A DNA stretch of 64,000 nucleotides, from the IMG/VR virus record IMGVR_UViG_3300024358_000009, positions 124,001-188,000 of that record, one strand, 5' to 3'. Below the pieces are notes generated by a model that saw only the letters and a list, made by a program, of their open reading frames with translations, searched no databases and was not told where the DNA came from. Every line of letters starts with the position of its first letter. Within the stretch, counting starts at the first letter, position 1. The position numbers and the translations under genes are program-made. Shown piece by piece: positions 3,895 to 40,593 of the stretch.

Positions 3895-4646
3895 GGTTCA
3901 CCTCTTTTAAAAATTACACCAAACCAATTAAGTATTCTTTTATACCAAGGTATATAACCATTTATATATAAATATGTTGTGTCATTACAGTACTGAGGTT
4001 TGTCTTCAAATTCCGGTAAATACTCAGTTGTATTTTTACTTTCAAATAAAATATTATCTGAATATTTATTAACTTTTATTTTATTTTTTATATCATAACT
4101 TAATGACTTTGGCCAAGCAGATTCTAATACATCTCTATGATTATTGCTTAATACTGGTGGCCAAGAGTGTTTATTATTTGTTATTGCAAAAACAGCTGTT
4201 TTCCAAGCTTCTAAATAGTCATTATTCCATTTAAATACAGATGCTAAAAAACCATCATTAATTTGTTTTTCAAAAATTTTATAAGCAACTGGACTAACCC
4301 TTGTATCTGTAGCATGAACAATGATAAAGCAACTATCTCCGTGTTCTTGAAAAATAATAGGAAAAGCTTTTCTAAAATTTATACTCTCATAAAAACTGGT
4401 ATTTCCTACTTTGTCCAAAGTTTCTCTGTAAATAATATCATGAATCAATTTCCTTTTTTTTAAATCGTCTAAAATCCATTTTTTAGAAATTTCTGGATCA
4501 GCCCACAAAATATAAATAATGGGGCTGTGTTTAAAGAAAATTCTACATCTATAGATATGCTGAACATTATCTATTAGTTCGTGATATCTACGATGCAGAG
4601 TTATCAATATTATCGGTCTTTTGTAAGCCGATTGTGTGCATTGCAT
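3891..4646 (-). CDS. Hypothetical protein, possibly glycosyltransferase-like
   Basis: 251 aa AT-rich ORF between portal and protease; start uncertain because it overlaps the portal end. Confidence 0.5.
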   Translation of the reverse strand: MQCTQSAYKRPIILITLHRRYHELIDNVQHIYRCRIFFKHSPIIYILWADPEISKKWILDDLKKRKLIHDIIYRETLDKVGNTSFYESINFRKAFPIIFQEHGDSCFIIVHATDTRVSPVAYKIFEKQINDGFLASVFKWNNDYLEAWKTAVFAITNNKHSWPPVLSNNHRDVLESAWPKSLSYDIKNKIKVNKYSDNILFESKNTTEYLPEFEDKPQYCNDTTYLYINGYIPWYKRILNWFGVIFKRGEP

Positions 4647-13211: not shown

Positions 13212-13471
13212 GGGGCAACCGAGGAAGTTTAGGTAGTACATTTTGTTGTGTGGGTGGGGATTATGTTTGAACCGCCCACCCCCCCGGGGCCGGGCCGGGT
13301 CGGTAAGCTGGGCAAGATAAATACCCTAGGCAAGCCGTCGCCGTAAAGCCTTATACAATAAGCACTTAAGAAAAATAAAAAAAACAAAAAAATTTTTATC
13401 GCCATAACCCCTTACGCCATAACAACTTAAAATTATTTTAAAAATATTTTATAAAAAAAGTATTTTTGCTA

Positions 13472-13556: not shown

Positions 13557-14045
13557 ATGACCACTTCAATCGACTATGCAAAGATTACTGAAAAGCTTGT
13601 TTCCGCACTTGGCAAGAAAATACGCAACTATGCGGACTGCCAAGACATAGCTCAAAATATCCTAGTGTATGCTTTGCAAAGTTATAACCCTGCTATGGGA
13701 TCGGCTTTTGAAACGCACTGCTTTACTGTTATGCGTGGCAAGTCCATTGATTTCCTGAGAAGTAAATCCCGCAAGGGTAATCTGGTAAGCTGGGATATCC
13801 TTGAAGCTAATGACAATAATTCAGAAAAAACACTAGCACAAGGTATAGAAATTGCCGAAAAAACCTCCAAGTATAACCTATTGGAGATTGCAGAAGAATA
13901 CTGCAACGAACAAGAATATTTTATCATCCAACGCAAGCTTGAAGGCTTCGATGGATATGAAATAGCCAATATGCTAGGGGTTAGCCCAGGATATGTTAGT
14001 CAACAATTGTCAAGAGCAATAGAGAAAATGAAGGGGGGGTTCTAG
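13557..14045 (+). CDS. ECF-like sigma-70 factor
   Basis: 162 aa with only region 2 (DCQDIAQN...SIDFLR) and a region 4 HTH (GYEIANMLGVSPGYVSQQLSRA); AAAGGAA RBS. Confidence 0.85.
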   Translation: MTTSIDYAKITEKLVSALGKKIRNYADCQDIAQNILVYALQSYNPAMGSAFETHCFTVMRGKSIDFLRSKSRKGNLVSWDILEANDNNSEKTLAQGIEIAEKTSKYNLLEIAEEYCNEQEYFIIQRKLEGFDGYEIANMLGVSPGYVSQQLSRAIEKMKGGF

Positions 14046-14294: not shown

Positions 14295-14522
14295 TCTAAA
14301 GGGTTTTAACCTAACCTGCCAGTCTTACCCAACCTGGCCGGACCAGCCTCGGTACGCACATAGGTAATTGTATTACTTGTACTATGCCCGCAAAAATTGG
14401 ATATCTTTATCTTATTATCCAAATATCTTTTTAAAAATATTTTATTTTTATTGTAAATAAATCTGCAAGCGTAGCGAATAAGATTATATAAGAGAGAAGG
14501 GAATAAACAAAAGGAGAATAAA

Positions 14523-14940: not shown

Positions 14941-15015
14941 CGCCAAGGTTTCCCAGTATATCCATAAAACTGGGGGGCAAATAGTCAACTATATTTTTAC
15001 AGAAAGGAAACGACT

Positions 15016-15315: not shown

Positions 15316-15380
15316 ACAAAAAAGTTTTTCCTGTTTTTTCCTAAATAAAAGCAGGGGGCAAGCGAATAAGAGTATATAAC

Positions 15381-15603
15381 GCTAGGGCACTTGCTGATAC
15401 AAGAGGGCCACTTCCTTGGTGAAAATGGGCTTATCAGAGTCTAAGTAACCTTAAGAGGATGGGATAGTTCGAGACTATCTGGCGTAACCATATAATGATA
15501 GGTATGTTTGGTGTTTAGGTGCAATCCTCCGTGAGATACGGCAAAACGAAAAACACCGTTTTTAAACCTGTTAGTGGGGATGTCTTATCCCTGCTAACCC
15601 TAC
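15381..15603 (+). ncRNA. Candidate structured ncRNA (about 220 nt)
   Basis: Starts just after the promoter at 15363; no RBS-led ORF; multiple helices, with G-U pairs favouring the + strand. Confidence 0.55.
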
Positions 15604-15880
15604 CGAAATTGGATATCTTTATCTAATTATATTCTTTTAAAATTTTTTTATTTTGTTGTAAATAATTTTACCCTGCCAGCGAATAAGATTATATAAGCTT
15701 GGTGGTAATGCTTAAACCATCTATGCGAATGAGTATAGAATGAGGGGAGCCTGGACTATAATTGGATAATCTTATCTTATTATATTATTTAAAATAATTT
15801 TATTTTTTTTGTAAATAAATCATAAGCACTAGCGAATAAGTATATATAAGAGATAACGATAACAACAAAAGGAGATTAAA

Positions 15881-16815: not shown

Positions 16816-16868
16816 GAATTCTGGAAATAATTTTCTTTGGGAAACGAATAAGTAAGTAAGAGGTCAAT

Positions 16869-20626: not shown

Positions 20627-20721
20627 TTTTGGAAATATTTGCCAATGGTTGGCGAATAAGTATATGTAAGGTTGAGAGTTTTAATTTATAGGGCTGAAAG
20701 CCCAAGAAAGGTTTGGTCATC

Positions 20722-21858
20722 ATGTCTAATGGTAGCATCGGTATTCGTTCTGTGCGTGGTTTTTCCGGTTCGGCTTATGCTGGTGTAATCGAAAGATTCA
20801 ACAATCGTAAGGATCATTATCATGACAGTCTTTGCACTGTTGCCGGTGAATCCGCTAGGGTTCGTCCAGTTGTAGTCGATGGTAAGTTCCAGCTTCTGGA
20901 TAAGAAGAACGAAAAGTTCTATACTCCAACAAAACACGCTCTTAGTCAATTCGCTCAGAAGACTAAGTGGGGTTCTTATACAATCAATAAGTTGGCAGAG
21001 TCTAAAGATGTACGCCATCACAATATATTGCGTGACCTTCTTGATATTTCTTTCCAAGAGTTCGGAGGAGAATATCTCTTTAGGTTCAACGATCAGGATG
21101 ATACCTGTCGGGCGTTTTTGAGTGATCGTTACGCAATCATTAATAATGGATGGGTATTGGATGAAGTCCAGAAGTTCCTACCAGCTGAATGCAAAGATGC
21201 GGTAGCTATGGATAAGTCCGGCGAAGACTTTATCAACTTCATGGTAGTGCTACCAAGTAGCCTTAAGTCTTCCGATGATAGCGACTATCAAGGTTTGATC
21301 AAGGTTAAGAACTCTGAGATTGGCACTCATCGCCTTGATGTTACTGCCGGTGTCTTCCGCACTATTTGTTCTAATGGTGCAATCGGTTGGGTTAAGCATA
21401 ACGATGTAAGTGTAGTCCATCGTGGTAAGGTAGACTTCGAGCTTTTGGCTAATCATATTCAGTCGGCTATTAGCTCACATATTCAGGCTATGCCTACCAT
21501 GATTGAAAAGCTTTTAGGTACTAAGCAAATGGGTTGGGATGGATCAATGACCCCCCTGTTTGCCTCTGTCGCTCAAACCTATAAGTTGAGCAAGAACGAA
21601 GTGGAGTCCGTTCATACGGCATGGGGTGTAGAACGCAATGAGACTCCTCAATATGCCAAGACCCTGTTCGGCGTGGTTAATAGCCTAACAAGGGGTAGTC
21701 AACGGATGGTTGAGTCTTCTTGGGAAAAGCTTAACGACATTGGTGGTGAGTTGGCCAATTACGATGAAAGTGATTGGACTGGCCTTAAAGCCAAGGCTAG
21801 GGCAATGACCTCCAAGGATGTTGAGAATGTCTTGGGCAAGGAACTATCCTTCGCCTAA
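20722..21858 (+). CDS. DUF932-family phage/plasmid protein
   Basis: Motifs RAFLSDRY, NSEIG, FRTICSNG and TLFGVVNSLT; likely start MSNG at 20722 behind a GAAAGGT RBS. Confidence 0.75.
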   Translation: MSNGSIGIRSVRGFSGSAYAGVIERFNNRKDHYHDSLCTVAGESARVRPVVVDGKFQLLDKKNEKFYTPTKHALSQFAQKTKWGSYTINKLAESKDVRHHNILRDLLDISFQEFGGEYLFRFNDQDDTCRAFLSDRYAIINNGWVLDEVQKFLPAECKDAVAMDKSGEDFINFMVVLPSSLKSSDDSDYQGLIKVKNSEIGTHRLDVTAGVFRTICSNGAIGWVKHNDVSVVHRGKVDFELLANHIQSAISSHIQAMPTMIEKLLGTKQMGWDGSMTPLFASVAQTYKLSKNEVESVHTAWGVERNETPQYAKTLFGVVNSLTRGSQRMVESSWEKLNDIGGELANYDESDWTGLKAKARAMTSKDVENVLGKELSFA

Positions 21859-21868
21859 GATAACCCAA

Positions 21869-21942
21869 GGGGATGTAGACCAACAGGCAGAGTCAAAGGA
21901 CTTAAAATCCTTCCAGTATGGGTTCGACTCCCATCATCCCTA
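21869..21942 (+). tRNA. tRNA-Leu (anticodon UAA), short variable loop, no encoded CCA
   Basis: Acceptor GGGGAUG/CAUCCCU; anticodon arm AAGGA-CUUAAAA-UCCUU; T arm AUGGG-UUCGACU-CCCAU; discriminator A. Confidence 0.92.
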
Positions 21943-21945
21943 ATC

Positions 21946-22045
21946 CCCGCCTTACCTTTCGGGCGGGTTCCCCCATCCAGCTTGTTTCGTTTCCTTTCAG
22001 GCTGGATGCCGTCTAGGGGTGGCCTTGACCTCTCCATCCCTAGAC
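21946..22045 (+). ncRNA. Three-hairpin RNA with pyrimidine-rich (anti-Shine-Dalgarno-like) loops
   Basis: Hairpins at 21946-21967, 21974-22008 and 22011-22045, each with a G-U pair that forms only on the + strand. Confidence 0.6.
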
Positions 22046-22089
22046 ATTCTTATAAATATTTTTACCTCTGTATCGAATAAGATTATATA

Positions 22090-22173
22090 GAGGTAACCTG
22101 CTTGTCTTAGCAATGATAAGCGGGTCGCTGGGGTATTTTACCCATATTATCTAAGTCTATATAGGCGTACCTC
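22090..22173 (+). ncRNA. Candidate multi-branch small RNA
   Basis: Follows the promoter at 22074; closing stem GAGGUA/UACCUC; 11-bp hairpin ACCUGCUUGUC/GAUAAGCGGGU; hairpin GGGUA/UACCC. Confidence 0.5.
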
Positions 22174-22334
22174 ATCCCCAATTCCCCTTATGGAAGGCCA
22201 AGTGGGCGGGTTTTCAGCGATTCCCTCACGCTCCTGTATATACTTATTCGTTATAGAAGCGGAAATATTTTTTTAATTTTATTTAAAATATTTTTGGTTG
22301 GTGAGCGAATAAGACTATATAAAGGAGAAAGCAA

Positions 22335-25300
22335 ATGAAGACATATCCAAAAGAGAAAGTTATAGGCCAATTCAAGGTAAAAGCCGTGGATGGATGCATA
22401 GTTAAGCCTGAGAAATGGCCTTTTGGAAGGCTTTTGATGCCATCTAGCTGGGAACCGGCAGGGCATTACCTACAAAGAGGGTGGGGAGAACATGAAGGTA
22501 GCATAGCAGTTAATGTATATATAACAGGTAGAACCATAAAGTATAACTTTAAACATGGTCACCATATAGCTATCCTTTTAGAATTTGTCGGGGATTGTGA
22601 ACCAAGTACCTACACTTACGGAATCCTAGAAGTAAGATTAAACAACGGAAGCATGGAGAGAATTGATGTAAGTCCTTGAGATATAAGGGTTTAAAAAATT
22701 TTAGAATTTTTATATTATGTGCGACCCAATTATATTGGAATATGCCCATAATACCCCCTTAAACCCTAGTCCTCTCTCCTCTGTATGGTATGTACTTACA
22801 TATACCTTATATATAAAGGAGTTATGTCAAATGCTTATATTAAGAGGAGTGTTAAAAAGTGGAGAAAAGTGGTGAAAAAGCCCAAAGAAAACCCCTCAAA
22901 TAATACATCGAACAAAGTAAATAATTCACCCTCATAAGCGAATAAGTATATAAGGAGATAGATATGAAGGATGATTTAAAGCATAGATGTGAAGACCTAT
23001 ATATAGTCGAAGGGGCATCTGCTGTTTTTGACTATTGCCAGTCTATTGACCATAAAGACTATGGGGATTGTGACCAATGCCAGACTTATGTTCCTATATA
23101 TAAAGATTGTTGTCTTCTTTGCGGAACAGAATTAAAAAGAGTAAACAAAACTGTATAGATAACGAATAAGTATATAAGAGAAGTTATACATAAGGAGATT
23201 AGACATGGCTTTTACTTGGAGTGCTTCAGAGTGTGATGAGAACAATATTAAAAATGTTCATAATACAGATCAGGATAGAATAGCTTGGGCTTGTTTAGAT
23301 ATTGGCCTGAGTGGTATTACCCTTAAGAACTATAAAGAGTTCTACAGAAGAATGAGGCTTAGGGGCGAACTGTTCAATATCTATAAGGAGTTGACGCTAA
23401 ATCACATATTTAACTGTATAGGTTTGGTCACATCTGCTGCTGATTTAAGCAAGTCTGATTTTCACAAGAAGACTATAGAGCTATTTAACTATCAGGTGGA
23501 AAGAGAAATAGCTTGTGGCCGTATCCCATAGTGTTTTTGAATTGATATAACTTGTTATTTGATAAGGAGTTATGGAAATGGTTACAAACAACACCAATAC
23601 ACATAGATACTTTGCCGAAGTCTTCTTCCGTTCTAAGAAGGGAAACCCCTGTGCATATCATCTGTATATGGATGGTAAAGATGAGGAGGAAGTATATGGG
23701 AATATAGTAGGGAAGGTAAAGAGACTTAAGTATTTTGACAGAGTAGATAGAGTGGACATAGTAAAAATGCAACCCCTTGATAAATAAGGACTTATATCAA
23801 ATGAATAATGCACAATTCGACAATGATATTCCCCCAATGATCTTTGAATTTAGGTTCACTTCCTACAACAAACAAGGTCAAGCTTATGAATCCAATAGGA
23901 TGGTCAAGGCTTGTGGTATAGATCATGCAGTAGAGAAATTTAACGAGGAATTTACAGATTGGGGAGAAGAAGTACCAAAGTGGGATTTAATGAACATTAT
24001 GGCTATTGAAAGTAAATAAATAGCTGTTAGGGCGAATATGTAAATATAAGGATGTAGCAAACATAAGGAGGGTCAAACAATGGATGATTTCAAATATTAC
24101 ATTGGTGAAATTCTAGAGATTAATTGTGGTTTTGAATACGAAACAAAGTACATATTTAAAATATATGAAGATGAATCTACAGATGAACATACAGATAGAG
24201 TAGCAATGAATTGGAGGGGCGGTAGCAAGCATGATTGGGATGTAAATGAGGGCTGTTATAGATGTAGTCATACATTTATCTTTGATTCTGGATGTAAGGA
24301 AATAAGCAAAGAAGAATTCGATGTACTATCTGAACATCTTGCCATTGTATAGAAAGGCAAATCATGGATAAGTCTAAAAAAGAACTAATACATACTGTAA
24401 TTAAACAGATAGTCGATGATACAAAACATAACTATTATGAGGGTATAACAGCATTACTTAACCATATAGATACATACAAGCTTATAGCTTTTTTACCAGA
24501 AGAAATGCATGAGAAATGGAGGGGCGATGACTTTTAAAATTTTTAGAGAAGAACTTGTACACGAAGTATTCGACATGGTTTTAAACCATATAGATAATGA
24601 TGACTATTCAGTCATATGGAAGATATTAGATCGTATGGACATATATGAGCTAGTGGCTTTATTGCCTAAAGAACAGCGTGAGAAGTGGGATAGTTCTATT
24701 GTATAAAGGAGTAAACAATGTCTTTGAATTTAAGACAACAAGTGACATACGACATATGGAACAAAGTATTTTCAAATGTAGGTAATGAACACTACCAAAC
24801 CATATGCAACATACTGGATAAACTAGATATCTTTGACCTGTTAGGCATCTTGCCCAAAGAACATCGTAAGAAGTTTGAAGGTTATGTTATTAATTCAGAT
24901 GTAATGGAGAAATAACATGGAAAGACAAGAAAAAATCAACATTTTGATGGCCCATGACATTATGCAAATTAGAGAAGATATAGAAAATGGAGATTATGAG
25001 CTTGTTTGTTCTATTCTACAGGGAGAAGGATGGGAGCAATACAATAAGCTTACAGACTACCAAATAGATGGTGAACTTGAGGACAGATTTGTTTATGTCA
25101 ATTTAAATGACAAGATTATTGATTTGGCTAATAGATTAAACGGCAAGCCTATCAAGTTAGAAACATAATACCGCCACTTATTAAAATATGGAGGTATTTT
25201 GACGAATATATAAATATAAGAAGGAGGACAGACATGAAGTTAGATATTAAAAATATGTGCGTAGTATCTGGAAAAAACAAATATCAAATTTCTTTTGATG

Positions 25301-26619
25301 ATATAAACATCGGCGATCAAGTATACAACCCATTATCAGATGTTCTAATTCATATAGATGAAGATGATGACATTGAATATGTAAATAATAATTATTTTAA
25401 AATCTGTTAATATTTTTTAGTAAACTGCGAATAAATATATAGGAAAGGGGATTAGCAATGAATGAAAAGCTAGAAGATTTGAAATGGTTAGATGGACGAA
25501 AGGTTTTAAACTTTGTTGGTATTTTACCAGACGATGAGCATCAAGAATGTATTGACTGCAAGTTCACAGGACAAGTTCATGCTGAGTTTGAAGTAGAAGG
25601 ATTGGAAGAAGCTGAAGTAGTTTGCCCAAAGTGTGCAAGCCTACATTACTACATTGTTTAGTACCTATACATGAAGGAAATCAATCATGAAAATCAAAGT
25701 ATCGGACAGGGCGATATATGGATATATACCAACAGAAAATCCAAATGTATTTAATAGAAAAAGCGTAGTATTTATAAAAGACCGAGGTTATTTATTCCAA
25801 GAAAATTCAGTAAAGATCATTAAACAAATATTGGATGGCATCGTATATGAAATAGAAGAATCAACACCATATGATGCTAAAACGATTATGTTGGAAAATC
25901 CAAGAAGGTATAGCAAGAAAAGGTTGGGCGAACTTTTTGACATTCATGTAAAAGGAAATACCAATGAAGGAAATTAAGTATATCTATGTAGATGTAACAG
26001 CTAGGGTTTGTATATCTACATACGAAGACGATAAAGAGAACTCCATCCGTGGACTTAAACCAGATTTTGTTTCTACAGTTGGTGATTATGTAGAGTGGGT
26101 AAAAGTTGAAAAAGTTAATGAATTGAAAGTTTAAGGAGCAAACATGGAAAGTAATTTGAATGAAATCGCCCAAGGTGCAATTCATGGTGATTTTTTGGCT
26201 GATGTAAGTAAAGTTGGTGAAAACTTTGTTGTCAGCATTAAACACTATAAGCATGATGAAGACCATTGCCGTGGACAAAATCAAGTAGTTGGCGAACTAC
26301 ATAAGGCTATTGGGGCATTAAACCTCAATAAGCTTGAGAACATCACGCATGGTGGCGGTTTTGCTTGTGTAAAATGTAAGTAATAAAAGTTTAAAAGGAT
26401 AGTATCATGGCTAAAGTTTCTATCAATGCTGAAAACGCTTCTAACGCTTTTTTTAATGTGGCTGATGTAATTGAGTCATTAAAAAGGTTTGACAATGTTT
26501 TGGAATCCCCTATTTCAGATGACGATGATAATGGTTATTCCATCGGCGATTGTCTAGATGACATAAAAGCATTTCTTCAACAGCTAGATGAAGAATGTAT
26601 ATCATCTGACAAAAACTAA
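22335..26619 (+). CDS. Run of small hypothetical genes, including tandem paralogues at 24364-25168
   Basis: Dense ORFs of roughly 55-115 aa with AAGGAG-type RBSs and CGAATA promoters. Confidence 0.65.
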
Positions 26620-26667
26620 TAATAAAATTAGGGTCTGTAGCTCAATAGGTTAGAGCAAGCGACTCAT

Positions 26668-27418
26668 CTGAGGTTGTCTTCTTGGTTCAAATGGTGTAAT
26701 ATAATTACAGTATTACACTATAAGGAGACAACATGAAAAGCGATGTAAGAATCTTAAATGGTTATAGACTTATATTTTTGCCAGAACACTCAAGAGCTAT
26801 GAAAAATAGCAATTGGGAAGGATATGTTTATGAACATATCGTAGTTGCTGAAGAATGTGTTGGTCGTAACTTAAAAGATGAAGAAGTTGTGCATCATTTA
26901 AATGGCAAAAGAGATGATAATAGACATCAAAATCTATTAGTTCTCGAAAGAAGCCAACACGCTAAACTTCACGCTTGGATAGACTCAGGTGCTTCTGGTT
27001 TGGAAACTGCCAGAAAGAATCGGATGAATTCAATGAAAATGTCACATAATGAACCTAAATTTTGCAAAATTTGTTTTCGGACACTACAAGATAAACAATC
27101 AAAATTTTGTGGTATTGATTGTCAATCTTTAGGAACTCGTATTGTTAATAGACCTGAAAAAAATCAATTAAAAGAAGATATTGAAAAAATGTCTTTTGTA
27201 AAAATTGGTAAAAAGTATGGTGTTTCAGACAATACGATAAGAAAATGGGCTAAGCAATATGGAATTATGCCATCAACATTGAGCCAAGCCATTGGTACAC
27301 CAATGGAAGGTGCAGAGACTAGCGGAGAGGTAAAGCCCTCTTAATAACCGCACTAGCGTCCGATATCCTTATGGGATAATGATATAGTCCATGGAGGGTA
27401 GAAATACCCACAAACATG
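26668..27418 (+). mobile_element. Group I self-splicing intron (751 nt) inserted 3' of the CAU anticodon
   Basis: P1 CAU|CUGAG pairs with CUCAG-GUG (26984-26991), U-G at the splice site; P3 AUCGGAUG/CGUCCGAU; P4 UUCAAUG/CAUUGAG; P7 from CAGAGACUA and GAUAUAGUCC; P9 GGGUA-GAAA-UACCC; terminal G27418. Confidence 0.93.
26733..27344 (+). CDS. Intron-encoded HNH homing endonuclease with Zn-finger and HTH
   Basis: YVYEHIVV...VHHLNGKRDDNRHQNL; CKIC...FCGIDC; HTH FVKIGKKYGVSDNTIRKW; AAGGAG RBS. Confidence 0.9.
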   Translation: MKSDVRILNGYRLIFLPEHSRAMKNSNWEGYVYEHIVVAEECVGRNLKDEEVVHHLNGKRDDNRHQNLLVLERSQHAKLHAWIDSGASGLETARKNRMNSMKMSHNEPKFCKICFRTLQDKQSKFCGIDCQSLGTRIVNRPEKNQLKEDIEKMSFVKIGKKYGVSDNTIRKWAKQYGIMPSTLSQAIGTPMEGAETSGEVKPS

Positions 27419-28051
27419 AATCGCTAGGTTTTCGGTTCAAATCCGAACAGACCCATTAAATAAACATTCTTTATCAACGGAGATAAATAATAATGCCCAG
27501 AACATTCCAAGCTAAGATTGTAATATTTGTCGAAGTTGATGTTCCTGACAATATGCCAGAATTAAATGTTGAAAGCTGGGTTAATTATGAGGCTAAACTT
27601 TTGGCAAATAAAATGTTGTGGGATGAAAAAACTAAATTTGAAATAGTTCATGTGGAATAAAAATATGACAAGAAAAGATTTCTTAGAACTGGTAGATAGA
27701 TCAAGGATGACAAACAGCGAAAGAATAAATGCTGGACTTCCTCTTGCAGAAGAAGATATTAGGCGAGTTCTAGATGAGTGTTATCCATATTTAAAGAAGT
27801 CAAAGGAATGGGAAAATGATAGAGATGGGTAATGGCTGGACTGTTAGCTTAAAAGACAATTCGTGTTTGAATAAACTATCATATCAAGAAAAGAAAAAAT
27901 GGTGGAATGATATAAAAAAAGTAACACCAATTCAATTTTCAGTAAAGGAAAAGGCAGATACAGCGAAGATATTATTAGAGAGAAGAACGAAATTTGAGTG
28001 GATTGTTACTAACACTCTTTTTCTTGGTCACTATCACGAAAAGAGACAAAG

Positions 28052-28124
28052 GGGCGTGTAGACCAATGGCAGAGTCAAAGGACTTAAAATCCTTCAAGTA
28101 TGGGTTCGACTCCCATCACGCCTA
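28052..28124 (+). tRNA. Second tRNA-Leu (UAA), short variable loop, no encoded CCA
   Basis: Near copy of 21869-21942 with a compensatory acceptor stem GGGCGUG/CACGCCU. Confidence 0.92.
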
Positions 28125-28133
28125 TCCTATTAA

Positions 28134-31100
28134 ATGAAAGGATTAATTATGGATGATTTTGTTTATGTGGTTAGACTTTCAGATCGTTACTACTTTGTGG
28201 GTTGGTGCAAAGTTGATGTTGTTAATTTCTGGAGAGAAATAAAGAGCATTGTAAATAAATTATATTTTGAAACCTATATAGAAGCAGAGGAAGTTGTAAA
28301 GCTTTTAAAAAGTAAAACAACTTTAAGTTGGGAAGTTAAACAAGTTAATCTGGAGGTCAAGCTATGAAAATTGATGACGCTATTAAGATGTTGCAGGAAG
28401 CAAAAGCGGAAGGGAATAAAAATATTATTTTTGCATTCTGGACAGCAGATATATTTACAAAAGTAAACGACAAGGGAGTTACTAAGAGTTATAAAGAAGG
28501 AGAAGTTTGGAAAAACTTGGTTGAGTTTATTGATAAAAATATGGATTGGGGTTATACGCACGAAGCATTACAAGAGATTATTAATGCTGTAAGAGGTGCT
28601 AAAAATGCATAAGAAACAAATTTTAGAATTTCTTGATGCAGAGACAGAGATAGAAGCTAGATCAAATATGTTTAGATATACAGAGTGCGGGGCGTTCATT
28701 GAATTCAAGGATGATCGTATTATAATTGGCTCAATTGTTGAAGGATCGGAAAATGGAACTGAATATTTTGAATTTGAATATGGCAAATTTACTGCAAATG
28801 AATTCCTAGATGCAATACAAGAAATTGAAAGACAGGCTAGTATAATCTGGGATTGGGCAAATAAAGAAGATGAGAATGGTCTTACAAATGCCGAGAAAGG
28901 ATATGATTGGCCACTACTATGATCAAAGAAGATTTTTTAAAATACCTGAATGCCAGTAATGAATACAGAGCTAGTGTTAATTTCAATTCTTATACAGAAT
29001 ATAAAGTATTCTTAAGATTTGATAAAAACTCTATTTGTTTACATACAGCAGATAATAAAAAATCTCATGTATTAGAATATGGTAAATTTACTAAAGAACA
29101 ATTTGATTTGCTCGTAGATGAACTGGAGAAGTAATGCATACATATTATGCAATTAAACATTCAAATAAAAAACCATGCATTGTTGGTATGGTTCAAGCGT
29201 GGAGAAGGGATACAGCTAATAAAATAGCAGAGGTTTGTTTTGCAAAAAGAAACTCTGACAGAGTGTATTTATATGTACAACCAAAGGGTTTTGTAGATAA
29301 AAATACAAAAAAATATATTTGGAGTAAATTTAAAAAGGTTGCTGACGAATAAATATATATAGCAAGAAAGGAGTTTGATATGACCAGCATGGAAAACAAG
29401 AAAGATTCAAAAAACAAGAAACCAAGATTATCCGATGAGGATATTCTTACTCAAGTTTTTATTCAATGTGGCCGTCCTAAAGACATAATCAAAACTGCTG
29501 TCGTTAATGTTTTTGATAATAGATATAGAGTTAATGTATGGCAAAGCATTAACAATCCATTTCTGCCAAAAGCCGGAAAGATTGTAGCAAGTTTTTTTGT
29601 GGTTGTTACTGACGAACTAGAGGTGAAAGTAATTAAATAAAGGAAATACAATGATTGAATCGCATGGAATGCTTTTAAATTATTTTTGTGTTGACCCATC
29701 TAATTATAAAAACGAAGTTCAAATAAACAACGATCTGTTTCCAGATGGCTTAACCATTAAAAAGGTTGACAATCTAACTGTTTTGTTAAAAGCAAAACAC
29801 GCAATGAAAATCTTGTTTTATCCAATTAAACTTAAAAAGTTAGAAACTGCTTGTAATAACTTAGCAAAAGAAATGAAGGAGGAATCCAATGAAATGGTTT
29901 CAAGATCATAGCAATGTTTGTGCATTAGCACGATGGCTGGCCGGACTTGGAGAGTGGGAAAATATTGGAGATATTGAACTTCCAAATGGACAAACTGTTG
30001 AGGACAATCCAGCCGATAGGCTTATTTACTTCTTTGAAAAACCTTGGAAATGGGATTCTGAATGGGAAGAATTTAAGAAATCTGGGCATTCGTAAGACGA
30101 ATAATATAATATAGGAAGGAGGATATAAAATGATTATACAAATTGATAACCAGTCTAGGCATATATTTGCTGTTGCTGCAAATTACCTTGTAGTAGACGA
30201 AGATAAGATCATTGGTGCTTTTATTACTAAGCGTGAAGCTATTGCACAAGAAAAGGTATATAAAAATGCTAAAGATGATTGCATTGATCTTGTGTCTTAT
30301 GATGCTTAATGGGTGTGGAACTGTTGAGCAATCTGTATCAACCAGCATATCTCCCTATGATTCTAGAGAGATAGAAAAAGTAAATGTGAGTTTTAGATAT
30401 ACTTATACTTTTCCAAAATAAGGAGAATAAAATGAAAATGTATCTTATTAATGGTTATAAAGATAACCAAATTCGTGCCGGACTTCTTGAAAAAGAGTGG
30501 CAAAGTAAAAATGGCACTCCTCTTGTAACATTAAAAATTATTGACCATTACAATGAACATAAGACTGTTTACAGGACTTATCATAAAAATAAATTGGCGG
30601 TAATGAAAGTTCTTGAAATGGATGACAATCTTTTATCTAAATAACTGTACTACTCATACTAGAAGGGTTGAAAATTAAATGGCTAACAAAGGACAAAGCT
30701 GGAAACAAAATCGCTCTATTACTCCAGAAGAATTTGTAAAGGTATTTACCGAAAAGGATTCTTTTGAAGAAGTGGCAGAATATTTTGGCCTTAGTGTTTC
30801 TTCTGTAAAGAACAGGGCGTACTCCTTAAAAAGATCTGGCGTAAACCTAGTGACAAAAAAGAAAAATGCCAAACCATTTTTTGGAACTCAGGGATTTGAT
30901 GTGGATTCGCTAAATAAAATCATTCAGAAGGCGAATAAATAAATAGAGGAGACTAAAATGCCACTAAAGCCAACTGCCGGTGCTGACTATTTTTTAATCT
31001 TTGGTTGTATCTTAACTTTTGTTATAGGTCTTTTTAGGAGTAATAGATATGTATAGAAGGTTCTTTATTACAACTGTAGCGTCTGTTCTTACAGCTGGCT

Positions 31101-39121: not shown

Positions 39122-39316
39122 ATGGAAACAGGGAATTTAGTTTTTACAAGAAATTTTGGAGAGTCTTTTACTATTTTCACTCCATCTGGAAACATAGTAA
39201 TAACACTTCTTGCAGATAAGATAAGCATAAATAAAGCAAAAGTAAAAATAAATGCTCCAAAAGATTTTAAAATTATGAGAAATGAAATTATCAATACAAC
39301 GAGGGATAAAAAATGA
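39122..39316 (+). CDS. csrA: CsrA/RsmA family RNA-binding protein
   Basis: LVFTRNFGESFTI...VKINAPKDFKIMRNEI matches the CsrA pattern; TAGGAG RBS before the ATG at 39122. Confidence 0.8.
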   Translation: METGNLVFTRNFGESFTIFTPSGNIVITLLADKISINKAKVKINAPKDFKIMRNEIINTTRDKK

Positions 39317-40593
39317 ACAGGCGACACTTTTTACAGCATACAACAGAATTTGCTTCTCTTGCATTAGTATCTAATCTATATGCACAGCAAGAAACCATAA
39401 AGAAAAAGGGAAAAAGACTCATTGTGCTTTGGATGAGTGGTGGCCCAAGTCATATGGATTTATGGGATTTGAAGACAGGAGAATCAACTGGTGGAGACTT
39501 TAAACAGATCAAAACTTCTGCAAACGGAGTGCAGATTAGTGAGGTATTGCCAACAGTTGCTGAACAGTTCAAACACTTGGTGGCTATTAGATCTTTGGTT
39601 ACTAATGAAGGCAGTCATGAGCGTGGCACATTCTTAATGAATACGGCCAAGCAACCAAACCCAGTAGTGCAATATCCAGCTATGGGCGCAGTTGTATCTT
39701 CTATGATTGGCTCTAAAGAGTTGCCATTACCTAATTTTATTGGAATTGGTGGAACTGCACAACGCATTGGGCCAGGATTCCTTGGCGCAATGTACACTCC
39801 TTTTGTTGTGCAAAATCCTGGCGTTCCTCCAGAAAATATAAAGCCACCATCAGAAATTGGCAATGAAGAAGAGCGTCTTAGAAGAAGGCAGAGATTATTC
39901 TACGGAATAGAAGATGAGTTTGCTGCAAAGATAATGCCTCATGTAAAAGGTGCAAAAGACAGAGAAAGTTTAGGTAATGTCGCACAATCACATGCTTCTA
40001 TATATGGTAAAGCATTTGATCTAACTATTTCGCCACTTAGAACTGTATTTGAAATAAAGAACGAAAGCCAAGCGACTATAGATGCTTATGGCGGTAGGAT
40101 GAATCAGTTTGGCATGGGATGCCTTCTTGCAAGAAAATTAATTGAGAAGGGAGTTAGTTGTGTTCAAGTGGATCTCGGCGGATGGGATAATCATAATAAT
40201 ATCTTTTCTACTATTAGGAATGGTAATGGCCCTCGGCTTGATAAAGGTTTTGGAAACCTTGTAAAAGAACTAAACGATATTGGTCTTTGGAAAGATACTG
40301 TAGTTTTATGGATGGGCGAATTTGGTCGTACACCTAAGATTAATCAAAATGGTGGACGAGATCATTGGGCAAGATGTTGGTCTATAGTAGTAGGCGGAGG
40401 TTCCATTAAGGGTGGACAAGCTTATGGTTCTACTAGCAAAGATGGTTTAGACATTAAGGATAAGCCATGCTCAATAGGCGATGTATATGCTACTGTTTAT
40501 AAAGCTTTAGATATGGATCTATCTGCTCAAATTAGAGACAACATTGGACGACCCATGGCTATTACAGAAGGAAAACCTCTAGATATCTTTTAA
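39313..40593 (+). CDS. DUF1501 family protein with Tat signal
   Basis: Motifs MNRRHFL, LWMSGGPSHMDLWDLK, CLLARKLIEKGV, GGWDNH, WMGEFGRTPKIN and GRDHW. Confidence 0.92.
   Translation: MNRRHFLQHTTEFASLALVSNLYAQQETIKKKGKRLIVLWMSGGPSHMDLWDLKTGESTGGDFKQIKTSANGVQISEVLPTVAEQFKHLVAIRSLVTNEGSHERGTFLMNTAKQPNPVVQYPAMGAVVSSMIGSKELPLPNFIGIGGTAQRIGPGFLGAMYTPFVVQNPGVPPENIKPPSEIGNEEERLRRRQRLFYGIEDEFAAKIMPHVKGAKDRESLGNVAQSHASIYGKAFDLTISPLRTVFEIKNESQATIDAYGGRMNQFGMGCLLARKLIEKGVSCVQVDLGGWDNHNNIFSTIRNGNGPRLDKGFGNLVKELNDIGLWKDTVVLWMGEFGRTPKINQNGGRDHWARCWSIVVGGGSIKGGQAYGSTSKDGLDIKDKPCSIGDVYATVYKALDMDLSAQIRDNIGRPMAITEGKPLDIF

What the first reader, a model, noticed from the sequence alone, without database searches (positions are those of the whole stretch)
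21946..22045. tRNA-trailer RNA with three loops complementary to phage ribosome-binding sites
Seen: three GC-rich hairpins directly after tRNA-Leu, each favoured on the + strand by a G-U pair. UCGUUUCCUUUC (21987-21998) is the 12-nt complement of the RBS of ORF 15016 (15002-15013). UUGACCUCU and CUUGACCUC (22024-22033) match the RBSs of ORF 16869 (16859-16867) and ORF 28364 (28353-28361). ACCUUUC (21954-21960) matches the RBS of the DUF932 gene (20706-20712). Known: C/U-rich loop sRNAs such as staphylococcal RNAIII repress translation by pairing to SD sequences. Inference: a multi-target translational repressor released by tRNA 3' processing, switching off early or host mRNAs.
Basis: partly seen in the sequence, partly recalled or inferred. 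Interest (0 to 1): 0.78.

Follow-up and report, generated by a model that had tools for sequence, protein, structure and literature searches.

The report
Phage hairpin array with anti-Shine-Dalgarno loops
Behind an early gene of an uncultured 206-kb freshwater phage lies a conserved row of RNA hairpins whose loops copy pieces of the ribosome's mRNA-docking tail, which probably lets the phage block the ribosome-binding sites of its own early messages; the neighbouring tRNA is incidental.

Summary
Three strong hairpins (21946-21967, 21974-22008, 22011-22045) follow tRNA-Leu(UAA).

The element is not really a tRNA trailer. About 20 distinct relatives from lakes and rivers carry 2-6 such hairpins directly after the same DUF932 gene, with or without a tRNA. 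Stems change by compensatory substitutions while the loops stay conserved: 79% pyrimidine, with motifs (N)ACCUC and CCUUUC, the two halves of the 16S rRNA 3' tail.

None of 71 more distant DUF932 loci has such loops. No other intergenic hairpin in this genome has them either.

Target evidence is mixed:
- The 7-nt DUF932 match is at chance level.
- The 9-nt H3 matches alone give P 0.11.
- The 12-nt match gives P 0.026 and is not kept in a relative.
- One early gene (ORF 16869) is matched by two loops at once (post-hoc P 0.004), and its ortholog is again matched in a relative.

Most likely this is a new phage-encoded regulatory RNA domain that pairs with ribosome-binding sites (confidence about 0.4). 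A passive terminator or stabiliser, or a protein decoy, is not excluded. No expression data could be obtained.

The parts
20653..20668 (+). Copy of the repeated early-promoter motif (TAAATA-N15-CGAATAAGNNTATATA) that heads the DUF932 transcription unit
   Evidence: The motif occurs 22 times in the window against 2.7 expected. Nearly all copies are on the + strand, just upstream of the RBSs of early genes. Promoter function is inferred.
20722..21858 (+). The hairpin array always follows it.
   Evidence: Pfam PF06067, E 8e-8. The fold matches only E. coli YfjQ/YubP/YafZ. Graded homologs span 98-30% identity.
21869..21942 (+). tRNA-Leu(UAA), 74 nt, with no encoded CCA and no long variable arm. 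It occupies an exchangeable slot between DUF932 and the array.
   Evidence: It is absent in clades B and C. L184 has a different tRNA(UAA) in the slot.
21946..21967 (+). Hairpin H1: 7 bp including one U-G pair; loop UACCUUUC at 21953-21960 (CCUUUC motif)
   Evidence: Homologs in clades A and B have 3 stem pairs changed on both sides.
21974..22008 (+). Hairpin H2: 11 bp including one U-G pair; 13-nt loop at 21985-21997 (UUUCGUUUCCUUU)
   Evidence: Three compensatory pairs. The complement of the loop core is the top RBS 6-, 7- and 8-mer of the phage.
22011..22045 (+). Hairpin H3: 12 bp including one G-U pair; 11-nt loop at 22023-22033 (CCUUGACCUCU, ACCUC motif). Probably also the terminator of the unit.
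   Evidence: In the 96% relative L023 the stem is largely replaced while the loop is unchanged. The last hairpin is followed by a run of 5-9 U in most relatives but only UUCUU here. The terminator scan does not call it.
22053..22089 (+). Next early-promoter motif (TAAATA at 22053-22058, CGAATAAGATTATATA at 22074-22089), which bounds the array on the 3' side
16840..16867 (+). Best candidate target: the initiation region of ORF 16869 (123 aa, weak Phage_L5_gp82 hit). GGAAACGAA (16840-16848) is complementary to the H2 loop and AGAGGUCAA (16859-16867) to the H3 loop.
   Evidence: the only one of 260 initiation regions with matches of 8 nt or more to two loops; P 0.004 against shuffled loops, a post-hoc test. 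Its ortholog in L101 has a 10-nt match to that genome's H2 loop. Pfam result.
15002..15013 (+). RBS of ORF 15016, a 12-nt complement of the H2 loop (21987-21998)
   Evidence: P 0.026 uncorrected. It is not maintained in L101, where a 7-nt core remains.

Best explanation
The three hairpins are the local version of a conserved RNA domain at the 3' end of the DUF932 early transcription unit in a clade of uncultured freshwater phages.

Proposed mechanism:
1. The domain is transcribed with DUF932 from the phage-specific early promoter at 20653.
2. It ends at the last hairpin, which doubles as the terminator.
3. In this lineage the 5' end is probably freed by endonucleolytic 3' processing of the CCA-less tRNA inserted in front of it. 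In tRNA-less relatives it stays a 3' UTR or is cut out by other RNases.
4. The stable stems protect the RNA and display 8-13-nt loops carrying (N)ACCUC or CCUUUC, the two halves of the 16S rRNA anti-Shine-Dalgarno tail.
5. These loops pair with purine-rich Shine-Dalgarno regions, chiefly those of the phage's own strong-SD, short-leader early mRNAs. ORF 16869 is the best candidate in this genome.
6. Pairing competes with 30S binding and damps early translation as the RNA accumulates.

Shown computationally: the structure, the strand, the conservation with covariation, the conserved loop motifs, their complementarity to the consensus RBS, and clade specificity.
Inferred: transcription, processing, RNA-RNA pairing in vivo, and the direction of the effect.
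For: Structure and strand:
- z = -7.1 on the + strand against -3.6 on the - strand.
- 32 G-U cells on the + strand across relatives, with all stem cells paired.

Conservation:
- 2-6 hairpins follow DUF932 in every relative of 67% identity or more, about 20 distinct sequences from many metagenomes.
- 28 stem pairs are changed on both sides, and RNAalifold finds 4 compensatory pairs in the terminal hairpin.

Loops are selected, not stems:
- ACCUCU and CCCUU are invariant in clade C, while 8 of 9 stem pairs of that hairpin vary.
- In L023 the H3 stem is replaced and the loop kept.
- Loops are 79% pyrimidine in a genome with 14.6% C.
- Similarity to the 16S 3' tail exceeds shuffles: 122 against 98.5 +/- 4.4. 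One loop, in L024, is CCUCCUUUCU exactly.

Specificity:
- 0 of 71 regions downstream of more distant DUF932 genes have such loops.
- They are the only such hairpins in the genome; the other terminators have 4-6-nt loops plus U-runs.

RBS complementarity:
- The complement of the H2 core is the top RBS 6-, 7- and 8-mer.
- Initiation regions pairing at -8 kcal/mol or better, against mid-gene controls: 64 against 10 for H2 and 49 against 10 for H3.
- Early genes carry the strongest SDs: AAAGGAG in 17 of 103 early genes against 3 of 157 others.

Lineage-specific matching:
- The two-loop hit on ORF 16869, P 0.004.
- A 10-nt hit on its ortholog in L101, P 0.04.
- Cognate loop/initiation-region z-scores are the row maximum in 4 of 8 lineages.
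- In clade C, the base flanking ACCUCU forms G-C, A-U and U-A with the RBS of one orthologous gene in three sublineages.
Against: - Single-loop matches and duplex energies are no better than for shuffled loops of the same composition.
- Some conserved loop motifs (UCCCUUUC) have no full complement among the phage's RBSs: GAAAGGGA occurs in 0 of 260.
- The 12-mer and the H1 7-mer are not maintained in relatives.
- In five clade-C loci the 'gene X' initiation region is replaced and does not match the unchanged loop.
- The ORF 16869 orthologs of clade C match by only 5-6 nt.
- The two-loop and covariation statistics were devised after seeing the data. The lineages are not independent. Gene starts come from a crude SD-based caller, which is partly circular.
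- Some hairpins of the arrays lack the motif: the first hairpin of clade C and the third of clade B.
- There is no evidence that the RNA accumulates. Logan contigs gave flat depth.
Confidence: 0.4

Rival explanations
1. Passive RNA-end element. The last hairpin is the intrinsic terminator of the DUF932(-tRNA) unit. The others are 3'-exonuclease barriers or processing aids that stabilise the mRNA or tRNA precursor. The loops have no pairing function.
For: - The array sits at the end of a transcription unit, directly before the next promoter.
- A U-run of 5-9 follows the last hairpin in most relatives.
- More distant DUF932 genes have an ordinary terminator at the same place.
- Single-target statistics are at chance level.
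Against: - It does not explain why 8-13-nt loops persist. The genome's other terminators have 4-6-nt loops.
- It does not explain why loops are 79% pyrimidine and C-rich in a genome with 14.6% C.
- It does not explain why loop motifs stay invariant while stems turn over.
- The terminator scan does not call any of the three. H1 and H2 have no U-tract.
Confidence: 0.2
2. Protein decoy or recruitment RNA. The array presents repeated pyrimidine-rich or 16S-tail-like loops to a protein, in the manner of CsrB/RsmZ-type sponges. Candidates are ribosomal protein S1, Rho (YC-rich sites), a factor or nuclease that recognises the 16S 3' tail, or the DUF932 protein itself.
For: - The copy number of hairpins bearing the same short loop motifs varies from 2 to 6, as in sponge RNAs.
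- The motifs are conserved even where no complementary RBS exists in the phage (UCCCUUUC).
- Linkage to DUF932 is strict.
- Loops resemble the 16S tail itself beyond what their composition gives.
Against: - No candidate protein is identified.
- The DUF932 model shows no known RNA-binding fold. Its only matches are uncharacterised YfjQ-family proteins.
- The region is almost fully base-paired (-50.6 kcal/mol), which suits Rho loading poorly.
- The lineage-specific loop/initiation-region matches are not expected under this model.
Confidence: 0.2
3. Cis-acting 3' UTR. The loops pair with purine-rich sites within the same polycistronic early transcript, such as the DUF932 RBS or upstream genes, to control its own translation or decay rather than acting in trans.
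For: - In tRNA-less relatives the array is simply the DUF932 3' UTR.
- The clade-C candidate target ('gene X') lies only about 0.6 kb upstream of DUF932.
- The H1 loop has a 7-nt complement in the DUF932 RBS.
Against: - The DUF932 RBS (GAAAGGU) stays constant in clade A while the H1 loop changes, so there is no covariation, and the 7-mer is at chance level.
- Gene X has its own promoter motif directly upstream.
- The insertion of a tRNA, whose processing would sever the array from the mRNA, is tolerated in clade A.
Confidence: 0.1

Closest known systems
Staphylococcal RNAIII and Rsa-type sRNAs (RsaA, RsaE and others) with unpaired C-rich loop motifs
   Same: Several stable hairpins present C/U-rich loops that pair with Shine-Dalgarno regions of several mRNAs. 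Some targets are held by two loop contacts (PMC2790875, PMC2837412). The two-loop match to ORF 16869 resembles this.
   Different: - No sequence or structural homology: no Rfam match in the window or in relatives.
- The motif here is ACCUC/CCUUUC rather than UCCC.
- It is encoded by a large uncultured phage that looks virulent.
- It lies in a 3' UTR or tRNA trailer rather than being a free-standing gene.
- Hairpin number varies from 2 to 6.
3' external transcribed spacer of the E. coli glyW-cysT-leuZ tRNA operon (3'ETS-leuZ), a functional tRNA trailer
   Same: In this window the RNA lies between a tRNA-Leu 3' end and a terminator. It would be released by tRNA processing, like 3'ETS-leuZ (described in 10.1101/2021.04.25.441314 and my own knowledge of Lalaouna et al. 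2015).
   Different: 3'ETS-leuZ sponges sRNAs (RyhB, RybB) and is tied to its tRNA. Here the tRNA is dispensable: it is absent in clades B and C and swapped in L184. The array belongs to the DUF932 gene.
Phage antisense RNAs that occlude ribosome-binding sites (P1/P7 c4 RNA, P22 sar) and T4 RegB shut-off of early mRNAs at GGAG (own knowledge, not tested here)
   Same: - A phage-encoded means of silencing early messages at the SD.
- c4 RNA uses two loop sequences and is matured by a tRNA-processing enzyme.
- RegB shows that targeting early SDs is a workable temporal switch.
   Different: c4 and sar have one dedicated target with long complementarity, and RegB is a protein nuclease. Here the loops carry generic pieces of the anti-SD, and target specificity is only suggested.
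Regulatory loops of intrinsic terminators (SdsR, RseX, ArrS acting on fepA; PMC11979758)
   Same: The loop of the terminal, terminator-like hairpin is conserved (UCCCUUUC in clade C, GACCUC in clades A and B). This fits the idea that terminator loops can carry regulatory information.
   Different: In that study the effect is probably not by base pairing and depends on Hfq and RNase E in E. coli. Nothing comparable can be tested here.
T4 stable RNAs C and D in the tRNA gene cluster (own knowledge)
   Same: Small structured phage RNAs co-transcribed with and processed next to phage tRNAs.
   Different: Their function is unknown, they show no anti-SD loop motif, and they are tied to the tRNA cluster.

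Membership tests
C-rich-loop SD-pairing sRNAs (RNAIII / Rsa class) | Unpaired C-rich motif (UCCC) displayed in hairpin loops | tested here: inconclusive
   Loops are C/U-rich in all relatives. UCCC itself occurs in clade B and C loops (UCCCUUUC) but not in the three window loops, which carry ACCUUUC, UUCCUUU and GACCUCU.
C-rich-loop SD-pairing sRNAs (RNAIII / Rsa class) | Homology to the curated RNA families (Rfam RNAIII, RsaE and others) | tested here: not met
   cmscan at E <= 1 on the window (21000-29000) and on five relatives finds only tRNA, plus one chance-level hit to anti-hemB at 21.6 bits against a gathering score of 49.5.
C-rich-loop SD-pairing sRNAs (RNAIII / Rsa class) | Demonstrated pairing with SD regions and translational repression | not testable with these tools
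   Only complementarity statistics are available.
Intrinsic (Rho-independent) terminator | G+C-rich stem, short loop (3-8 nt), then a U-tract | tested here: inconclusive
   - The scan calls none of the three hairpins.
- Loops are 8, 13 and 11 nt.
- H1 and H2 lack U-tracts, and H3 is followed by UUCUUAU here.
- The last hairpin has 5-9 U in most relatives.
Functional tRNA 3' trailer (3'ETS type) | Lies between a tRNA 3' end and the operon terminator | tested here: met
   The tRNA ends at 21942, H1 starts at 21946 and the next promoter motif is at 22053-22089.
Functional tRNA 3' trailer (3'ETS type) | Evolutionary linkage of the trailer to its tRNA | tested here: not met
   - The array is present without any tRNA in clades B and C.
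- L184 has a different tRNA(UAA).
- The second tRNA-Leu, at 28052-28124, is followed directly by the next gene's RBS.
CsrB/RsmZ-type protein-sponge RNA | Repeated GGA motifs in hairpin loops | tested here: not met
   On the supported + strand the loops are pyrimidine-rich. GGA-type loops would exist only on the - strand, which the G-U pairs and folding energies disfavour.
Known RNA family of any kind (Rfam 15) | Score at or near a family's gathering threshold | tested here: not met

The most novel reading that the evidence does not exclude
The array is a deliberate mimic of the 16S rRNA 3' tail, split over several hairpin loops (ACCUC + CCUUUC). It would act globally rather than on chosen targets. 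One possibility is a Shine-Dalgarno sponge that reprogrammes which mRNAs the ribosome can load, shifting translation away from strong-SD early messages. The other is a decoy for a host or defence factor that recognises or attacks the anti-SD tail. Either would be a new way for a virus to manipulate translation initiation.
Probability: 0.15. Interest if true: 0.85.

Novelty: new variant of a known kind. Interest (0 to 1): 0.62.

Why it matters
Regulatory RNAs of virulent and uncultured phages are almost unexplored. This element is defined purely by comparative genomics. It is conserved across lake and river metagenomes with clear covariation, and it has an unusual, interpretable feature: loops that copy the anti-Shine-Dalgarno tail.

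If it pairs with ribosome-binding sites, it would be an RNA-based early-to-late translation switch. That would be the functional analogue of T4 RegB, achieved by antisense loops. It would also extend the RNAIII/Rsa logic to phages of (probably) planctomycetes.

It further shows how a tRNA gene can be dropped into a 3' UTR and so convert a UTR domain into a processed free RNA. The element gives concrete, cheap in-vitro tests even though the host is uncultured.

Tried and rejected
- **Expression evidence.** 24 riverine metatranscriptome runs hold the locus, but they are kept only as assembled contigs. Read laying gave flat depth, no ends and no strand. This neither supports nor refutes transcription.
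- **Public phage records.** There is no relative beyond the tRNA. The DUF932 protein has no tblastn hit and the terminase has only hits of 27% identity or less.
- **IMG/VR with the single protein.** It returned only five near-identical copies, with no informative variation.
- **The genome search on the metagenome loci.** Longer flanks came from the look-up of encoding contigs and a second IMG/VR scan instead.
- **Minus-strand reading** (GGA-like loops, CsrB type; antisense ORF 21855-22037). Rejected on G-U pairs and folding energy.
- **Repeat-family or REP-like element.** Rejected. The three hairpins differ in sequence and no other copies exist in the genome.
- **H1 loop pairing with the DUF932 RBS.** Rejected.
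- **DUF932 as an RNA-binding partner.** The structure model (pLDDT 72) matches only uncharacterised YfjQ/YubP/YafZ proteins and nothing in the PDB.
- **Rfam identity of the array or the neighbouring conserved segment.** None.
- **Not examined.** CRISPR-repeat mimics and ToxI-like antitoxin repeats were considered only by eye. The hairpins are non-identical, and stems of 11-12 bp with 8-13-nt loops are unlike either. No tandem-repeat scan was run.

Full report
**Setting**

- The window is bases 124001-188000 of a single 206,326-bp contig with 33% G+C.
- It encodes a terminase and a portal on the - strand.
- From about 12 kb onward it holds a long + strand block of small early genes.
- A phage sigma factor lies at 13557-14045 (Sigma70_r2 + r4).
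- A repeated motif, TAAATA-N15-CGAATAAGATTATATA, sits just upstream of the ribosome-binding sites of many early genes. It has 22 copies in the window against 2.7 expected, almost all on the + strand. I read it as the early or middle promoter; that is an inference.
- Public phage records hold no relative.
- A DUF1501 gene at 39313-40593 is 65-73% identical to genes of freshwater Planctomycetota/Gemmataceae MAGs. This is a weak lead to the host.

**The observation**

- tRNA-Leu(UAA) lies at 21869-21942.
- Directly after it, the + strand RNA 21943-22050 folds into exactly three hairpins at -50.6 kcal/mol, z = -7.1, with none of 200 shuffles as stable. The - strand reaches -42.9 kcal/mol, z = -3.6.
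- Coordinates:
  - H1: 21946-21967, 7 bp, loop UACCUUUC.
  - H2: 21974-22008, 11 bp, loop UUUCGUUUCCUUU.
  - H3: 22011-22045, 12 bp, loop CCUUGACCUCU.
- Each stem has one G-U pair that is possible only on the + strand.
- A scan of the whole genome shows these are the only intergenic hairpins with large pyrimidine-rich loops. The phage's ordinary terminators have 4-6-nt loops followed by U-runs.
- The region 20700-22500 is also a G+C-rich island, 42-50% against 33%.

**Are the quoted matches more than chance?**

I called 260 translation-initiation regions (TIRs) with a crude caller (longest ORF plus SD) and compared each loop with 1000 composition-preserving shuffles of itself.

| Loop | Best match | P |
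|---|---|---|
| H1 | 7 nt | 0.96 |
| H2 | 12 nt | 0.026 (uncorrected for three loops) |
| H3 | 9 nt | 0.11 |

- An energy-based version gives the same picture. The loops pair far better with TIRs than with mid-gene controls: 64 against 10 TIRs at -8 kcal/mol or better for H2, and 49 against 10 for H3. They do no better than shuffled loops (P 0.17-0.4).
- So any C/U-rich loop would find RBS partners in this genome.
- On the other hand, the complement of the H2 loop core (AAAGGA, AAAGGAA, AAAGGAAA) is the most frequent 6-, 7- and 8-mer in the phage's RBS regions. The early genes carry the strongest SDs.

**Relatives change the picture**

- IMG/VR holds only near-identical copies.
- The DUF932 protein upstream of the tRNA has a graded series of homologs, 98% to 30% identical.
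- I fetched their contigs, ran one metagenome scan and a profile scan of IMG/VR.
- Every relative with 67% DUF932 identity or more, about 20 distinct sequences from many lakes and rivers, carries 2-6 strong hairpins directly after the DUF932 stop codon and before the next promoter motif.
- The tRNA is present only in the closest clade.
  - The 73-75% and 67-69% clades have the array and no tRNA.
  - A 98% relative (L184) has a different tRNA(UAA) in the same slot in front of an identical H1.
  - The window's second tRNA-Leu (28052-28124) is followed at once by the next gene's RBS.
- The element is therefore a 3' domain of the DUF932 unit into which a tRNA has been inserted. It is not a tRNA trailer as such.
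- Both window tRNAs lack an encoded CCA. Endonucleolytic 3' processing would therefore free the array in this lineage (inference).

**Selection acts on structure and, more tellingly, on the loops**

- Across six groups of homologous hairpins, all stem cells remain paired. 28 pairs show changes on both sides, and 32 cells are G-U on the + strand. The register is counted from the loop outward, so a few pairs may be out of register.
- RNAalifold independently finds four compensatory pairs in the terminal hairpin of clade C.
- In that alignment the loop words ACCUCU and CCCUU are invariant, while 8 of 9 stem pairs of the ACCUCU hairpin vary.
- In the 96% relative L023 the H3 stem is largely replaced but its loop is unchanged.
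- The 25 distinct loops are 79% pyrimidine. Most carry (N)ACCUC or CCUUUC (UACCUUUC, UUUCCUUUC, UCCCUUUC). Together these spell the 16S rRNA 3' tail CACCUCCUUUC, and one loop (L024) is CCUCCUUUCU exactly.
- Similarity to that tail exceeds shuffled loops: summed longest common substring 122 against 98.5 +/- 4.4, none of 5000 shuffles as high. The loops are related by descent, so this measures conservation of the motifs, not independent events.
- As a control, none of 71 distinct regions downstream of more distant DUF932 genes (28-55% identity) has such a loop. They mostly have one ordinary terminator.
- No Rfam family matches the array in the window or in relatives.

**Specific targets: mixed evidence**

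Against:
- The 12-nt H2/ORF 15016 match falls to a 7-nt core in the 87% relative L101.
- The DUF932 RBS stays GAAAGGU while the H1 loop changes.
- Clade-C loops find no target better than shuffles do.

For:
- The TIR of ORF 16869 is complementary to two adjacent loops at once: GGAAACGAA at 16840-16848 to H2, and AGAGGUCAA at 16859-16867 to H3. It is the only one of 260 TIRs with matches of 8 nt or more to two loops. Only 0.4% of shuffles give any TIR with two 9-nt matches. I devised this statistic after seeing the match.
- In L101 the ortholog of that gene has a different RBS, which matches that genome's different H2 loop over 10 nt (P 0.04).
- In a matrix of loop sets against early-TIR sets from eight lineages, the cognate z-score is the row maximum in four: window 3.3, L192 2.9, L195 2.2, L101 0.8. 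The nominal binomial P is about 0.01, and the lineages are not independent.
- In clade C, an orthologous short-leader gene about 0.6 kb upstream of DUF932 has the RBS AGAGGU followed by C, U or A in three sublineages. The loop base flanking ACCUCU is G, A or U respectively. In five other loci that TIR has been replaced and does not match.

I regard specific pairing with nearby early TIRs as suggested, not shown.

**Most likely mechanism**

- The array is transcribed with DUF932 and ends at the last hairpin. That hairpin is followed by 5-9 U in most relatives, though only by UUCUU here, and the terminator scan does not call it.
- The array displays anti-SD-like loops that pair with purine-rich SD regions of early mRNAs and compete with the 30S subunit.
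- This is how RNAIII and the Rsa RNAs work (PMC2790875, PMC2837412). It would achieve what T4 RegB achieves by cleaving GGAG in early SDs (own knowledge).
- Membership in those RNA families is not supported. There is no homology, and the defining UCCC motif is absent from the window's loops.

**Rivals**

- A passive terminator or stabiliser. It explains the position but not the large, conserved, C-rich loops.
- A protein decoy or recruitment RNA (S1, Rho, a factor that recognises the 16S tail, or DUF932 itself). It fits the variable copy number and the motifs without RBS complements, but no partner is known. The DUF932 model resembles only uncharacterised YfjQ/YubP/YafZ proteins.
- A purely cis-acting 3' UTR.

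**Limits**

- There are no usable expression data.
- Gene starts are crude and chosen on SD motifs.
- Several statistics are post hoc.
- The host is unknown.

Noticed in passing
window 22090-22235 (flanking promoter motifs at 22074-22089 on + and 22250-22235 on -): A conserved non-coding segment of about 140 nt lies right after the array, bracketed by convergent copies of the early-promoter motif.
- It is conserved in sequence across clades A-C: CCUGCUUGUCUUA..., twin CCCC tracts, GGGCGGGUUU, CCCUCACGCU.
- Its first hairpin (22096-22125) has invariant U-G/G-U pairs and compensatory changes on the + strand. The rest is unresolved, and a - strand helix is also possible.
- It has no Rfam match.
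- It may be a second small RNA, or a sense/antisense pair.
   Followed up: partly
window 13557-14045 and about 25 sites between 14475 and 22321 (also the genome's left end): A phage-encoded sigma factor (Sigma70_r2 + r4) and a highly repeated motif, TAAATA-N15-CGAATAAGATTATATA, directly upstream of early-gene RBSs. They are probably a cognate pair. The sigma gene itself lacks the motif upstream.
   Followed up: partly
window 21869-21942 and 28052-28124; L184:3726-3800: Two tRNA(UAA) genes of 73-74 nt have no long variable arm and no encoded CCA, which is unusual for bacterial tRNA-Leu. A 98% relative carries a clearly different tRNA(UAA) in the same slot, so the slot is a hot spot of tRNA exchange.
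   Followed up: partly
window 20700-22500: A G+C-rich island (42-50% against 33% genome average) covers DUF932, the tRNA, the hairpins and the conserved non-coding segment. It is either a horizontally acquired module or a strongly constrained one.
   Followed up: no
window 15379-15660 and 15696-15790; motif copies near 14395, 15605 and 15760: Two promoter motifs are followed by structured non-coding stretches rather than ORFs. A conserved element (GAGGGGAGCCUGGA...AAUUGGAUAUCUUUAUCUUAUUAU) recurs just upstream of promoter motifs, and also in clade-B relatives (seen). These may be further small RNAs or unusual terminators.
   Followed up: no
window 13212-13340: An extremely G+C-rich, structured non-coding stretch (…CCGCCCACCCCCCCGGGGCCGGGCCGGGUCGG…; -23 kcal/mol in a 44-nt window on both strands) lies between the 2OG-Fe oxygenase-like ORF and the sigma gene.
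   Followed up: no
window 39313-40593: A DUF1501 gene (Pfam E 2e-92) is 65-73% identical to genes of freshwater Planctomycetota/Gemmataceae MAGs, some with about 40-45% G+C. It is a likely host-derived auxiliary gene and the only lead to the host.
   Followed up: partly
window 20689-20701: A small hairpin (GGGCUGAAAGCCC) lies between the DUF932 promoter motif and its RBS. It is conserved, with a compensatory variant (GAGCUAAAAGCUC), in L101.
   Followed up: no
L027 about 4265-4350 (downstream of its fourth hairpin): One clade-B relative has two extra hairpins appended to the array, making six in all. This shows that the array grows and shrinks by whole hairpins. Some clade-C members lack the first hairpin.
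   Followed up: partly
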